64,000 bases of DNA from Zootoca vivipara (lineage: Eukaryota): the NCBI RefSeq assembly GCF_963506605.1, contig NC_083277.1, positions 75,206,001-75,270,000 on the forward strand, given 5' to 3'. Shown piece after piece: positions 16,884 to 21,079 of this stretch; position 1 is the stretch's first letter; every line of letters begins with the position of its first letter. Below the pieces are notes generated by a model, which worked only from the letters and a program-made list of their open reading frames with translations, searched no databases and had not been told where the DNA came from. Position numbers and translations under genes: made by a program.

Positions 16884-17673
16884 CATGATAATTGAGGATT
16901 TGAACGTGGTCTCCTGACGCCTAGTCTAACACACTAGCCACTATACCTCTCTAATGCCTATGAGTCAAGTGCTTTGAAACTTAATTGTGTTTAAGAGATC
17001 TGAAAGTGCTCTCTGTGGTGTAATTGCTGGTGGTCTATTCATATTACTGTACATCAAACAATGAAGAAACCACAGATAACAATTGCAGCACCTATCTGTT
17101 CTATTATTATAGGTAAACAAAATTAAATGGCTGATGATGATCTCGCAAGTACACCTTCTCTCCTCCACCCAGTCCCAAAGGATCTTGAGTCATCCAATAG
17201 ATTTTTAGCCTCTGAACAGTTGTATTTCATCAGTTTTTTGAACCACCTTTGCAGACTCCAGGTGAAAAAAAAAGTTGTTGCAAGGCACTCAAATCAAGAA
17301 ACCAGTCCTTAGGTTTGGGACTTGCTGTAATGCCCAGATTCAGATCATGAGTGTATGGAAGCAATTGTAACAGGTGCTCACTTTCTGAATTTTCCTCTCC
17401 TCTAGGCAGCCGAGTGTGTGTTCTGGCTCATAAAGCACAGCTAGTGCCCTTGGCTCATCTCCCTTTGGAAAACACACTTTTCATCTTATGTCCAGAACTA
17501 GATAGGAATATTCTGTATGGCTTTTGCCACCAACTTTCAGATCAAATCAGACCTTCCATTAGGCCTAGGTGATATATCCATACTAGCTGTACCCGGCCAC
17601 GCGTTGCTGTGGCTCAGTCTGTTAAATGGAAAAGAAAGAAAAGAGAAAGCGCACATTTCTAATATGTTTAATT

Positions 17674-17846
17674 TCACAAAGCTTGTGGGTATACAATATT
17701 TTTTGTTGTTCCATTGTCTGTGTAGATATAGAGAATGTCTGGTTGCCGACTCTAGAACACGCAACATATAATTGTCCATGTAAGAAGCAGTCCATGTCTA
17801 GATCTAAACCGCATAATTCTAAAGATTGGCCCTGAGCTTTGTTGAT
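17674..17846 (-). pseudogene. Helitron RepHel PIF1-type helicase C-terminal remnant
   Basis: [34 protein letters not shown] (helicase motifs V and VI), then after a 1-nt frameshift PDILYIYTDNGTTKNIVYPQAL*. Confidence 0.9.
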
Positions 17847-18162
17847 AGATAAGACACACATGCCAGGCTTCCATTGAAAGCAGAGCGCCCCCTCCCCCCC
17901 AAAAAAAGACTCTCCCACCCACGCATATTCTGGAAAATCCCCCCACCCCACCCACCCCCAAAATAAACCATGGGCAAACCCCACCCCGCCCCATTCATTC
18001 TCCACAAAGCCACACCCCTCCTCCACTCAGCTCCCCCGTTCCCCACCCCAGCCGCATGATGTCACGACACCCCTTTCTCTGGTCTCCCTGTCGTGTGATG
18101 TCATCTTCCTCCCGCCTGACACCAGCTGCCACCCCAACCCCTCTCTCTCCACCCCTTGTATA

Positions 18163-18264
18163 ACCCATGGTCATCTTGGGGAGGGCCTGGCCGCTTCCCC
18201 TGGCAGGTCCCGGCAGACGAGGGGGCAGGTGACCCAGCTGCAGTTGTTTCTCCAAGGCGGACAT
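18163..18264 (-). pseudogene. PPME1: Captured fragment of PPME1 first coding exon, inside the Helitron
   Basis: gccATG start; MSALEKQLQLGHLPPRLPGPARGSGQALPKMTMG aligns without gaps to the recalled human PPME1 N-terminus MSALEKSMHLGRLPSRPPLPGSGGSQSGAKMRMG (19/34 identical); GC/CpG-rich 5'UTR-like sequence upstream. Confidence 0.8.
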
Positions 18265-21079
18265 GGCGAGGGCGGTGGGGAGAGGCAAGGCGGCGGTGTA
18301 GGGGCAGGATCCGGCACCCATCCTCCCAGAAGGAGCCGCCGGCCAGCCACTCCCAGCAGCCTCTGCGCGCTCGCGCTGGAAGGACACCGCCCCAAGGCGT
18401 CCTGAGAGTAAAATATTAAGTATAGCGTGTGTTGCTTTGATGTCCAACAGATGGTGGTGTTTTTCAAGAAAACATGTTTTTACCTGTCACAGGTGTGACA
18501 TCTATATAATATTGGTATATAAAAACACGCTCTTATTCAAATGCAACGTCAAATCAATCAGTGAAGAACTTTCAGAGATTTAAGATTTTGAACAAACGAA
18601 CATTTACATTTTTATTTATACAGAGAAGATATCGCCCAGGACCAGTATGAGGAGTAGACCGCGATGTTGGCTTCACTCAGAGGTATATTGCTGGTGAAAC
18701 CGCCACAGCTCCTGAGTCCCTCTGCCAGTGACTTCCCCCAGCGAGCATTACTAGCAGAGCTACTCAGGAGCAATGGCGGTTTCACCAGCGATATATCGCT
18801 AAGTGAAGCCGCCATCCCACTCTGCCCTCATACTGCGGAGAGGGTCAAAAAATCTGCATCAGTGAGGCCCCAATACAGCTTGTTCCTTCCTCTTCATTTT
18901 TAAACTACTCGGGTGAGGAGTGTGCAGTTGCCATTCCCCTCAGCTGAGCAGTTAAAGGATCCCCCAGCCTGGCACTGGCTCCCACGCAAGCAGGGGGAGC
19001 ACTGGGGATGGCTTGGCTAAGGATCAGGAGCCCTCCCATGCCCCAGCTGAGCCATACAAACAAGCTGTGTTGTCCCAGCCTGCTAGGCACTGAGGTGAAA
19101 CCGCCTCAGCTCCCGCAGTGAGACCTGTGGCAATTTCACCTGGTGCCTCGCAGGCTGATGCCAATGCAGCTTGTTTTTTCAACATTGTGGTATATCGCCA
19201 GACCGCGATGTTTGGCTGGTGATATACCGCAATGCTGAAATGCTGATATCGCCCAGCCCTAACTTCCATTGTGGTTTTGTCTACCCTTAGCAGCATCCGA
19301 TCCACCCTTCTCGAAAATTAACTTACTACATATGAAAATAACAAAACCACTGGGCAAAAGTATGAGAGAGAGAAAGTTATACATTAAAATTGGAACTGGG
19401 TATCACATTTGTGCTGCAGAAAAAACAAGCAAACTCTGTAATATAATGTATTCTCTTTCCAGAAACCTGCAATGCATTATGCTGCCAATAATGCTGTGCA
19501 ATGAATTAATTCTCTCTCTACATTCCATGGTGTGCATTACTGGCAAAATAATTCATTAGGGTCATTGTTCACAGAGAAACTGGAGAAAGGAGCTGAATGA
19601 AGGGGCTTGTATCAAAATAGGAATCCTAACCGCTGGATACTAAACCCACCAGACTCACAAAAACTTTGTGACCACCAGATTACCAGAAACGGATTCCATT
19701 CACAATGAGGAGCTAAATGAAATGTCACTTAAAAAGATGGACCCAAACACACAGACTGCATGTTCCAAGTAACCACATCAGACTACGGGCCTGAAACATT
19801 TGGTAGCAACAAACTCCCTAATTCAGCACGTTAAGCATTTAGACACTATTAAGCTAATATCCAAACTCTGAAGCACCAGAAATAAAGCATCACCGATTCA
19901 ACATGATTTTGGGAAAAATAAATTCCTCATCCTACAATCATTCAAGGCAGCAAAGCAACATCTGAAGCAGTAGTGGGTATGAAAACATGGCAAGTGGGGC
20001 AAAGTCTACTAGCCACCTTCCTTGTTTATCAAACACAGCTCCATCCCTGTCTTAACTGTTAGAGGCAAGTAACTTCACTGGACACAGAAGGCCCATGGAA
20101 TGCATGAAGGAGAGACTGAGGGAATCCAGACTACATCTACCGGTAGGTTTCCTTAGGAGCAGGACAAATTGCACCAGTTGTGACCCTGCACGTGAATCTT
20201 ATGCCCAACCCATGTAATTAAGCACTTGGGCTTAATTTAGGGTTTATACGAAGCTTTAGAGAAAGCAAGTTCTCCTCCGCAATGAAGCAGTTGGTGTTTT
20301 AAAGGCCACATTCACATGCTGAGCATGGAAGACCCAGAGCAACTCTGGCAAAGTTGTGAAGTAGCTTCTTTGCTGCTGCTTCTCTCATTTATTTCCTACA
20401 CGTCTAATCTCCTTTTTAGACAAATTGACTTTCAAAGCAGCTGGCAACATTAAAATCAATCCATAATACCAAGTAAAATATCCAATAAAGGCAGCAGTCA
20501 AAAATAAAACTCAAACACACAAAAAGGAAACAGGAGCAATAAAACATAACCCGGTTCCAGTAAAACTTTGAAGTCAAATATCTGCAGTGAACATCAAAAC
20601 ATGTCCTTAAAAAGAATTTCTGAAGAGGACGATCTTAACTTTAGTTATCTGGCAGTCTCCATGCATTAGGGAACATTCCCCCCCACCCCCAAGCTCGCCC
20701 TCTTCTGTACTCAGGAGGTGTAGACTCTCCTTTCATCATGGATGCTTTAACTGAGATTCCTGAGTTGCAGGGGGTTGAACAATTCTATACTACTATCCTG
20801 CTCCAGCATGTCTGGAACCAAGAGGATGGTCCTCAGAAAGAAGGAAAGGTGTTAAATGGATCATCATTAATGCTGGCACTTCCAATAAGCATGGAAAACC
20901 ATAGGAGACGAACCAGCCGCAGGACTTCACAATCCATTCAGGGCAGCTGTCATGTAAAAGTATAAAACTGTCACCTGACCAAAATACTCTGTGCCATCCC
21001 AAATGTAGGTCAGATAATAGGTTATAGCCCTCCAGAACAGGAACCCCAGAATAAGGCAAAAACACAGCAGTAATCTTAC

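What the first reader, a model, noticed from the sequence alone, without database searches (positions are those of the whole stretch)
17583..18629. Helitron carrying a captured PPME1 5'UTR and first coding exon, sense-oriented in SH3PXD2B intron 2
Seen: a complete Helitron frame (A|TC start, hairpin-CTAG|T end, PIF1 helicase remnant) encloses a CpG-rich block with gccATG and a 34-codon frame, MSALEKQLQLGHLPPRLPGPARGSGQALPKMTMG. Knowledge: as I recall it, human PPME1 (PP2A methylesterase) begins MSALEKSMHLGRLPSRPPLPGSGGSQSGAKMRMG, giving 19/34 identity with no gaps. Similarity stops at about where a first exon would end, which suggests capture at the DNA level rather than a retrocopy. Helitron capture of promoters and first exons is documented in maize and vespertilionid bats; I do not know of such a case in lizards. 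Inference: a squamate Helitron subfamily may be dispersing a housekeeping promoter/first-exon module.
Basis: partly seen in the sequence, partly recalled or inferred. Interest (0 to 1): 0.88.

Follow-up and report, generated by a model that had tools for sequence, protein, structure and literature searches.

The report
Lizard Helitron carrying PPME1 first exon
A 1-kb rolling-circle transposon (Helitron) in an intron of a lizard gene carries a copied 5' end (leader, first coding exon, start of intron 1) of the housekeeping gene PPME1; about 20-45 copies of this cargo are in the genome, as already known from bats and maize, and this copy looks decayed and silent.

Summary
On the minus strand, 18629 to 17583 is a complete non-autonomous Helitron. 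It has A|TC at the start, an 18-nt hairpin 9 nt before CTAG|T, and a helicase remnant whose best solved relative is the bat Helitron transposase Helraiser. Inside it, 18264-18163 reads a 34-codon frame. Its only match among all PDB sequences is PPME1 residues 1-34, Met to Met without gaps, and it ends at a GT.

Laid contigs show the cargo (about 17914-18393) at roughly 20-45 copy equivalents in the source species. In a related species it sits on one single-copy contig, which covers both the exon and the intron side and runs on into unrelated DNA. This fits capture as DNA and argues against a retrocopy.

This copy has TpG/CpA where the other copies, the relative and all RNA reads have CpG. No RNA read carries this copy's letters. 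At most 129 bp upstream of the ATG were captured, and at least 85 of those are transcribed leader. "Dispersed promoter" is therefore not shown.

The kind is known (bat HelibatN3/NUBPL). A host-gene capture in a lizard is new as far as the papers searched show. First readers flagged similar Helitron cargoes elsewhere in this genome; these are unchecked and none involves PPME1.

The parts
17583..18629 (-). Whole non-autonomous Helitron, 1047 bp, inserted between host A (complement of 18630) and host T (complement of 17582)
   Evidence: Sequence. Both ends are unique in the window. Depth jumps from single copy (about 60) to about 41,000 at the 17551-17691 bin, and the source-species contig 16855-17608 breaks 26 nt inside the element.
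18394..18629 (-). Helitron 5' part, AT-rich (GC 0.32). It begins with TC and holds the palindrome TGTCACACCTGTGACA at 18500-18485
   Evidence: Depth is about 260 copy equivalents in the source species and thousands in relative B, far above the cargo.
18265..18393 (-). Captured PPME1 5' UTR and at most a few tens of bp of proximal upstream sequence (GC 0.74, CpG o/e 0.67; a GGGGCGG box lies at the 5' junction)
   Evidence: The single-copy contig of relative C aligns up to 18393. Sense-strand RNA reads with non-window letters reach at least 18349. Composition.
18165..18264 (-). Captured PPME1 first coding exon: ATG plus 33 codons plus the first base of codon 34
   Evidence: Translation. Sole PDB match is PPME1 residues 1-34.
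18163..18164 (-). GT splice donor at the end of the PPME1 similarity. It is weak in this copy (GTTATA)
   Evidence: Sequence. RNA depth is 0 in the next bin, 17974-18114.
17914..18162 (-). Intron-1-derived part of the cargo. 17914-18069 matches the same single-copy contig of relative C. 18070-18163 is G-rich and did not align
   Evidence: table 3: rows 17983-18032 come from one contig of depth 45.9, the depth of record 17, and the distances to piece ends give a piece of about 17914-18069.
17697..17888 (-). Remnant of the C-terminal end of the Helitron Rep/helicase, in the orientation of the element. The frame's stop codon is at 17622-17624
   Evidence: Best PDB hit is Helraiser 7lcc_A residues 1423-1459, E=2.3e-5, followed by PIF1 helicases. 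ORF 17622-18026(-).
17583..17621 (-). Helitron 3' terminus: hairpin 17613-17596 (5+2 bp stem), 9 nt, then CTAG 17586-17583
   Evidence: Sequence. The fold shows the stem. The terminus family has about 740 copy equivalents in the source species.
21080..21160 (-). Exon 2 of the host PX-domain gene (SH3PXD2B-like), ag|...CAG|gtaag, 2.45 kb upstream of the Helitron in the gene's direction
   Evidence: Motif scan, sequence, weak Pfam PX hit E=0.056.
36000..36074 (-). Coding part of exon 1 of the host gene ([25 protein letters not shown])
   Evidence: Motif scan. The SH3PXD2B assignment rests on my recollection of that protein's N-terminus.

Best explanation
This is a fixed, decaying copy of a non-autonomous Helitron. 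It is an internal-deletion derivative of an autonomous element and keeps 236 bp of the 5' end and 331 bp of the 3' end, including the last ~45 recognisable codons of the Rep/helicase.

Its interior was replaced by about 480 bp copied at the DNA level from the 5' end of the host gene PPME1: leader, first coding exon, splice donor and the first ~250 bp of intron 1.

A transposase supplied in trans by an autonomous Helitron then spread this composite by rolling-circle transposition to roughly 20-45 places in the source species. One of those places is the A|T site in the intron after exon 2 of an SH3PXD2B-like gene, in the gene's own orientation.

Shown here: the Helitron anatomy, the PPME1 N-terminal match, the multi-copy state of the cargo in the source species against single copy in a relative, homology on the intron side, and CpG decay with no detectable transcription of this copy.

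Inferred: how the capture happened. The likeliest routes are template switching (filler DNA), or read-through from a Helitron 5' end near PPME1 to another Helitron's 3' end. Also inferred: germline methylation as the cause of the decay, and that this copy is a neutral passenger today.
For: - Helitron anatomy: TC start, hairpin, CTAG end, A and T flanks, no terminal inverted repeats. Helicase remnant nearest to Helraiser.
- Repeat boundary at the Helitron 3' end (17583): depth steps from about 60 to about 41,000 in the bin holding it, and the source contig breaks 26 nt inside the element.
- PPME1 identity: the only PDB-wide hit, Met1-aligned and ungapped over 34 residues, E=0.009 and 0.0054. 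It ends at a GT.
- Copy number in the source species: summed depth across 17974-18396 is 2,400-2,600 against about 56 for single copy, with 30-47 distinct contigs.
- Relative C: depth 46-53 against about 58, one 1132-nt contig aligned at 18164-18393 (23 mismatches, 6 gaps). By its identical depth of 45.9 it also aligns at about 17914-18069. It runs on for hundreds of nt unlike the window on both sides.
- RNA: reads lie only in the orientation expected for a minus-strand RNA. They all carry the letters of the other copies and of relative C, and there are none past the donor.
- Decay: 11 of 18 listed differences are CpG in the others and TpG/CpA here.
- Protein effect: putting the others' letters into the frame changes H12R, L17P and R22G. 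R12 and P17 are the human residues, so identity rises from 19 to 21 of 34.
- Precedent: bat Helitrons preferentially carry promoter, 5' UTR, first exon and first intron (PMC4224331; PMC2997563).
Against: - The native PPME1 locus of this genome was not seen. The PPME1 name rests on 34 residues of a low-complexity (P/G/S-rich) N-terminus at modest E-values.
- A 34-aa search of 1.8 billion proteins gave only a spurious repeat protein.
- The second, intron-side piece of the relative's contig is inferred from equal depth and end distances. It is not listed as a piece.
- 18070-18163, right after the donor, did not align to the relative.
- The other copies were not shown to carry the same Helitron ends.
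- Summed contig depth is only a rough copy number.
- The empty site in relatives is suggested but was not displayed. Their left-flank contigs stop aligning at 17582 and 17578.
- In relative B, short contigs over 18215-18287 do not show the 'other' letters, which I cannot explain.
Confidence: 0.85

Rival explanations
1. The captured module works. The copy acts as an alternative CpG-island promoter and first exon for the SH3PXD2B-like host gene, with transcription starting in the cargo and splicing from the 18165 donor to exon 3. More generally, the subfamily would seed new promoters around the genome.
For: - Sense orientation in the intron.
- ATG, open 34-codon frame and GT donor are retained.
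- CpG o/e of 0.49-0.67 is still far above the flanks.
- Bat Helitron cargoes of this type do contribute promoters and exons to transcripts (PMC4224331).
Against: - No RNA read carries this copy's diagnostic letters: 0 of 11, 11, 7, 7, 5, 5 and 3 reads at successive places. About 6% of one run was read.
- At most 44 bp lie upstream of the furthest RNA-covered base.
- CpG-to-TpG decay points to germline methylation.
- The donor is weak (GTTATA).
- The exon ends in phase 1 while host exon 2 ends in phase 0, so a fusion would be out of frame (sequence).
Confidence: 0.05
2. The cargo does not come from PPME1. It would be a CpG-island fragment of another gene or an intergenic island, and the 34-residue resemblance would be chance in a Pro/Gly-rich frame.
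For: - E-values are modest, 0.005-0.009.
- Pfam is silent.
- The 1.8-billion-protein search did not recover PPME1.
- No annotated PPME1 DNA was compared.
Against: - It is the sole hit among 177,635 PDB sequences.
- The alignment runs from Met1 to Met1 without gaps and stops at a GT.
- The letters of the expressed or ancestral version restore two more human residues.
- The single-copy homologue in a relative and sense-strand RNA ending at the donor behave like a real first exon.
Confidence: 0.06
3. The capture went through RNA: a retrocopy or cDNA fragment of PPME1 inserted into or picked up by the Helitron.
For: - The listed alignment of the relative's contig ends at 18164, at the exon boundary.
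- Bat Helitrons do carry retrogenes.
Against: - No exon 2 sequence follows. The PDB alignment stops at residues 34-37 and the frame reads YTRGGERG.
- There is no poly(A).
- The same-depth contig of the relative also matches 17914-18069 on the intron side.
Confidence: 0.03
4. The multi-copy state does not come from Helitron transposition. The block would have spread by segmental duplication or inside another element, and only this copy lies in a Helitron.
For: - The ends of the other copies were not displayed.
- The Helitron ends (about 260-740 copy equivalents) and the cargo (about 45) differ in number.
Against: - The helicase-remnant segment next to the cargo has a similar copy number, about 21-24.
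- Shared ends with different interiors is the usual Helitron subfamily pattern.
- Some 30-47 distinct, mutually diverged contigs look like dispersed copies.
Confidence: 0.03

Closest known systems
[quoted passage not shown]
   Same: A non-autonomous Helitron whose interior is the 5' end of a single-copy housekeeping gene, captured as DNA with part of intron 1 and amplified in one lineage.
   Different: Copy number here is about 20-45, not over 1,000. The host is a lizard. Very little sequence upstream of the leader was captured. No transcript from the copies is shown.
Other bat Helitron captures of gene 5' ends (for example TMBIM4 in HelibatN217.1 and SRPK1 in HelibatN211; PMC4224331)
   Same: The cargo is 5' UTR plus first exon plus partial first intron, of a few hundred bp, and the capture is specific to a branch of the host phylogeny.
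   Different: A different Helitron family, gene and host. Empty sites and parental-locus alignments were shown there and not here.
Anolis carolinensis non-autonomous Helitrons, Helitron-1N1 and Helitron-2N1 to 2N5_AC (PMC3014272)
   Same: Lizard Helitrons that are internal-deletion derivatives of autonomous elements, about 0.5-2 kb long, inserted at TA, with tens to thousands of copies.
   Different: That survey found only one composite family, holding fragments of other transposons, and called capture rare. No host-gene cargo was reported.
Heli1Xen1 and related Helitrons of Xenopus (PMC12001565)
   Same: Vertebrate Helitrons with frequent capture and amplification of coding exons.
   Different: The host is an amphibian, and that family is autonomous and still active. 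Here I saw only a non-autonomous, decayed copy.

Membership tests
Helitron (rolling-circle transposon) | 5' terminus TC and 3' terminus CTRR | tested here: met
   Minus strand starts with TCTTCTCTG at 18629 and ends with CTAG at 17586-17583.
Helitron (rolling-circle transposon) | Short GC-rich hairpin about 10-20 nt before the 3' end | tested here: met
   GCCACAGCAACGCGTGGC at 17613-17596, 9 nt before CTAG. The fold shows a 5+2 bp stem. The whole-stretch z-score is not significant (-1.24).
Helitron (rolling-circle transposon) | Insertion between host A and T, with no target-site duplication and no terminal inverted repeats | tested here: inconclusive
   The flanks are A and T, and no inverted repeat spans the ends. 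The relatives' left-flank contigs stop aligning at 17582 and 17578, but the joined empty site was not displayed.
Helitron (rolling-circle transposon) | Derivation from a Rep/helicase-encoding element | tested here: met
   17697-17888(-) matches the Helraiser C-terminal helicase motif, E=2.3e-5. It lies in the element's orientation and near its 3' end.
Helitron (rolling-circle transposon) | Many copies that share the termini | tested here: met
   About 740 copy equivalents at the 3' end and about 90-260 at the 5' part in the source species, and hundreds to thousands in two relatives. The numbers are rough.
DNA-level gene-fragment capture by a Helitron | The cargo is homologous to a single-copy host locus that lies outside any Helitron | tested here: met
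   In relative C, one contig at single-copy depth covers 18164-18393 and runs on into unlike DNA on both sides. The parental locus in the source genome itself was not seen.
DNA-level gene-fragment capture by a Helitron | The cargo includes non-mRNA sequence (intron or upstream) colinear with the parent | tested here: inconclusive
   An intron-side piece at about 17914-18069 is inferred from equal depth (45.9) and distances to piece ends. 18070-18163 is unaligned, and colinearity within the contig was not displayed.
DNA-level gene-fragment capture by a Helitron | Several copies carry the same cargo between the same ends | tested here: inconclusive
   The cargo is at about 45 and the adjoining helicase remnant at about 21-24 copy equivalents, with 30-47 distinct contigs. 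The ends of those copies were not seen.
PPME1 exon 1 | Encodes the PPME1 N-terminus from Met1 to the exon end | tested here: met
   The sole PDB hit is PPME1 residues 1-34, ungapped, E=0.009 and 0.0054. Identity is 19/34, or 21/34 with the letters of the expressed version.
PPME1 exon 1 | Nucleotide identity with the annotated PPME1 locus of the same genome | not testable with these tools
   There is no search of this assembly and no lizard PPME1 record within reach. The length window of the search for homologous proteins excludes a 386-aa protein for any stop-free query here.
Active CpG-island promoter | Transcripts start in the copy and CpGs are kept (unmethylated in the germline) | tested here: not met
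   No RNA read carries this copy's letters. 11 of 18 listed differences are CpG losses in this copy. CpG o/e is 0.49. Only one RNA run was read, at about 6%.

The most novel reading that the evidence does not exclude
This lizard lineage has a Helitron family that repeatedly picks up the CpG-island 5' ends of housekeeping genes. PPME1 is the case here. Unchecked first-stage notes elsewhere in the genome name TWF1, a DGCR6-like gene and several anonymous CpG islands. Under this reading, some sense-oriented intronic copies serve as new promoters or first exons. That would be a squamate parallel to the vespertilionid bat Helitron story, in a clade where Helitron capture of host DNA was reported as rare.
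Probability: 0.12. Interest if true: 0.6.

Novelty: new member of a known kind. Interest (0 to 1): 0.4.

Why it matters
Helitrons are the main DNA transposons known to copy and scatter pieces of host genes. Among vertebrates this has been documented chiefly in vesper bats and recently in Xenopus.

A checked case in a lizard, with lineage-specific amplification of a gene's 5' end, shows that the same bias towards first exons occurs in squamates. The one detailed survey of an anole genome had reported only transposon fragments as Helitron cargo.

For annotation there are two practical consequences. CpG-rich 'islands' and PPME1-like first exons in lizard introns can be Helitron cargo, not promoters or genes. 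RNA reads of the true PPME1 leader will also cross-map to them.

Tried and rejected
- The search of protein representatives with the 34-aa frame gave one hit, a 491-aa tandem-repeat protein (P0001). It is spurious, and PPME1 was not recovered at this length.
- The search for homologous proteins with the 150-aa ORF gave nothing. Its length window cannot reach a 386-aa protein from any stop-free query here.
- Pfam gave no family for the two ORFs or for the helicase remnant.
- The search of earlier findings gave nothing near this place, nothing by sequence and nothing for the word PPME1.
- A PDB search with host exon 2 gave no relevant hit. Rfam on 15500-21500 gave nothing.
- blastn of the element against the window found no second copy.
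- My read laying stretch (16000-20200) included an extremely abundant repeat at 16141-16986. That repeat filled the joints and loose-ends tables, so the empty-site joint in relatives and the loose ends at the 18165 donor were not displayed.
- I first read the 17974-18114 depth in relative B (about 190x) as an older Helitron backbone. I dropped this because the pieces there are only about 20-30 nt from their ends, that is, short C-rich matches.
- The host exons were searched one by one, by reference.
The comparison with human PPME1 uses only the alignments printed.
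Full report
**Observation**

Read on the minus strand, the stretch 18629 to 17583 has the full anatomy of a Helitron.
- It starts with TC (TCTTCTCTGTATAAATAAAAATG...) right after a host A.
- It ends ...GCCACAGCAACGCGTGGC-CGGGTACAG-CTAG right before a host T.
- The 18-nt palindrome (17613-17596) folds into a 5+2 bp stem and lies 9 nt before CTAG.
- Both ends occur once in the 64-kb window, with none expected by chance.
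- No inverted repeat spans the ends, and no second copy lies in the window.

The frame at 17697-17888(-) contains ...[35 protein letters not shown].... Its best match among all solved structures is the bat Helitron transposase Helraiser, residues 1423-1459 of 1496 (E=2.3e-5), followed by PIF1 helicases. The remnant lies in the orientation of the element, close to its 3' end, as in an autonomous Helitron. The element is therefore an internal-deletion derivative.

**The cargo**

Between the AT-rich 5' part (18394-18629, GC 0.32) and the helicase remnant lies a GC-rich block (17914-18393, GC 0.65, CpG o/e 0.49). The unique flanks have CpG o/e of 0.08-0.20.

- Searched against all PDB chain sequences, this frame has one match: human PPME1 (7soy_P), residues 1-34 against 1-34 without gaps, E=0.009.
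- The whole 150-aa ORF around it again finds only PPME1, starting exactly at both methionines, E=0.0054. The similarity fades at residues 35-37.
- The frame ends ...ATGG|GTTATA, so a GT donor sits where the similarity stops.

**Evidence from other DNA and RNA**

I laid four runs on 16000-20200 at 80% likeness: contigs of a DNA run of the source species (X1), contigs of two related species (X13 = B, X14 = C), and raw stranded RNA reads of the source species (X21). Single-copy depth in the unique flanks is about 56 (X1), 12 (B) and 58 (C).

- *Repeat boundary.* Depth jumps from 64 to about 41,000 between the bins 17410-17550 and 17551-17691. The X1 contig 16855-17608 breaks 26 nt inside the element. 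This supports the Helitron's 3' end (the low-coordinate end) at 17583.
- *The ends are an old, abundant family.* The 3' end has about 740 copy equivalents in X1, about 3,500 in B and about 330 in C. The 5' part has about 260, 4,500 and 100.
- *The cargo is multi-copy only in the source species.* Its depth is 2,400-2,600, about 43-46 copy equivalents, with 30-47 distinct contigs. The adjoining helicase-remnant segment has about 21-24.
- *In C the cargo has single-copy depth (46-53).* It sits on one 1132-nt contig (depth 45.9), aligned at 18164-18393 with 23 mismatches and 6 gaps.
- *The same depth, 45.9, with one contig, appears in the 'other letters' rows at 17983-18032.* The listed distances to piece ends place that piece at about 17914-18069. 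I therefore take it that the same single-copy contig also covers the intron side.
- *That contig runs on for hundreds of nt on both sides without likeness to the Helitron parts.* This is what a parental PPME1 5' region should look like. It argues for capture as DNA (exon plus intron) and against a retrocopy.
- *One stretch did not align.* The 94 nt just after the donor (18070-18163, G-rich) did not align to the relative.

**This copy is decayed and silent**

At the best-supported variable places in the cargo, this copy has T or A where most X1 contigs, the contig of C and every RNA read have C or G. Of the 18 listed differences, 11 are CpG in the others and TpG/CpA here.

Putting the others' letters into the coding frame changes three residues: H12R, L17P and R22G. 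R12 and P17 are the human residues, so identity rises from 19 to 21 of 34. The version that is expressed and single-copy is therefore the more PPME1-like one, as expected if this copy is a decaying duplicate.

RNA reads over 18115-18396 lie only with the first mate on the + strand. In the usual stranded libraries that means a minus-strand RNA, sense to the ATG.
- All of them carry the non-window letters (11/11, 11/11, 7/7, 7/7, 5/5, 5/5, 3/3...).
- They differ from this copy by 3 to 18 letters.
- There are none in the next bin past the donor (17974-18114).
- The simplest reading is that they are spliced native PPME1 mRNA cross-mapping to the copy. Expression of other, less decayed copies cannot be excluded.
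- No read can be assigned to this copy, though only about 6% of one run was read.

**How much promoter was captured**

The homology with the relative starts at 18393, only 129 bp upstream of the ATG. RNA reads reach at least 18349. At most a few tens of bp upstream of the transcribed leader were therefore captured. Together with the CpG decay and the weak donor (GTTATA), this speaks against a working promoter and first-exon module in this copy.

**Host gene**

A six-frame motif scan found, on the minus strand, [25 protein letters not shown] at 36000-36074 and [27 protein letters not shown] at 21080-21160. The second is bounded by ag| and |gtaag. It gives a weak Pfam PX hit, E=0.056, below the family's cut-off.

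From my memory of the protein, these are the first two coding exons of SH3PXD2B (Tks4), not SH3PXD2A. No exon 3 motif lies at lower coordinates.

Host exon 2 ends in phase 0 and the PPME1 exon ends in phase 1, so a spliced fusion would be out of frame. I searched the exons one by one and did not build a joined model.

**Presence or absence in relatives**

The left-flank contigs of B and C stop aligning at 17582 (7 nt of contig left) and 17578 (81 nt left, unlike the Helitron). That suggests the site is empty there. The joined form was not displayed, because an extremely abundant repeat at 16141-16986 filled the tables.

In B, short contigs over 18215-18287 do not show the 'other' letters. This may be an artefact of differences close to contig ends, and I leave it unexplained.

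**Mechanism**

Shown: a non-autonomous Helitron with an internal host-gene cargo, amplified in one lineage.

Inferred: mobilisation in trans by an autonomous Helitron's Rep/helicase through rolling-circle transposition into A|T sites.

The capture itself could have happened in two ways. One is template switching. The other is read-through from a Helitron 5' end lying upstream of PPME1 to the 3' part of another Helitron in intron 1. The junctions (18394-18405, and the T7G7-like run at 17891-17910) show no internal CTAG/hairpin or TC that would decide between them.

**Comparison with what is known**

The closest case is HelibatN3 of Myotis. [quoted passage not shown]

In bats, captures are biased towards gene 5' ends (PMC4224331). 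Xenopus Helitrons frequently capture coding exons (PMC12001565).

For lizards, the survey of Anolis carolinensis describes Helitron non-autonomous families as internal-deletion derivatives. It found only one composite family, holding fragments of other transposons, and called capture rare (PMC3014272).

No paper in the library links a Helitron capture with PPME1 or describes host-gene capture by a lizard Helitron.

First-stage notes of this scan flag similar Helitrons with CpG-island or first-exon cargo elsewhere in this genome (TWF1, a DGCR6-like gene, an island in an EGFR intron, and others). These are unchecked leads, and none concerns PPME1.

**Verdict**

It is a new member (new host clade, new captured gene) of a well-known kind. 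The copy itself appears to be a neutral, methylated passenger. Interest is moderate. It would rise if a genome-wide census confirmed recurrent capture of gene 5' ends in this lizard lineage, or if copies were shown to start transcripts.

Noticed in passing
window 16175-16322: A hairpin repeat (64-nt arms, 89% complementary, 20 nt between them) with enormous summed depth: about 300,000 copy equivalents in the source species, very high in both relatives, and thousands of RNA reads on both strands. From memory it resembles the very abundant hairpin MITE of anole genomes, which would place the window in an iguanian lizard.
   Followed up: partly
window 16700-16850: A second very abundant, SINE-like repeat (about 116,000 copy equivalents in the source species, more in relative C) that is strongly represented in RNA. 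Together with the hairpin repeat it flooded the joints and loose-ends tables.
   Followed up: no
window 18630-19383: The DNA next to the Helitron's 5' end is itself moderately repeated (about 25-120 copy equivalents). It holds an inverted repeat at 18656-18729 / 18750-18823 (74-nt arms, 81%) and a 20-nt motif, GGTGAAACCGCC.CAGCTCC, at 18693 and 19094, and inverted at 18767. The Helitron seems to have landed at the edge of, or inside, another non-autonomous element.
   Followed up: no
window 18215-18287: In relative B, short contigs at single-copy depth (11-14) cover these places without showing the C/G letters that relative C, the RNA and most source-species copies have. This could mean that B holds a copy sharing this copy's decayed letters. 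It could also be an artefact of differences near contig ends not being counted.
   Followed up: partly
window 18485-18500: A perfect 7+7 palindrome, TGTCACA-CC-TGTGACA, lies in the Helitron 5' part. Two TGACATCA motifs (18101-18094 and 18064-18057), which look like CpG-decayed TGACGTCA, lie in the intron-derived cargo.
   Followed up: no
window 11405-11416 and 22247-22258 (+ strand): Two copies of a repeat whose translation reads WPPHEKR(R/K)LPGKDPD(A/V)GKD...KGTTEDEM. This is probably another interspersed element and has no connection with the finding.
   Followed up: no
window 59744-59916: A run of 173 N (assembly gap or masked). I left it as it is.
   Followed up: no
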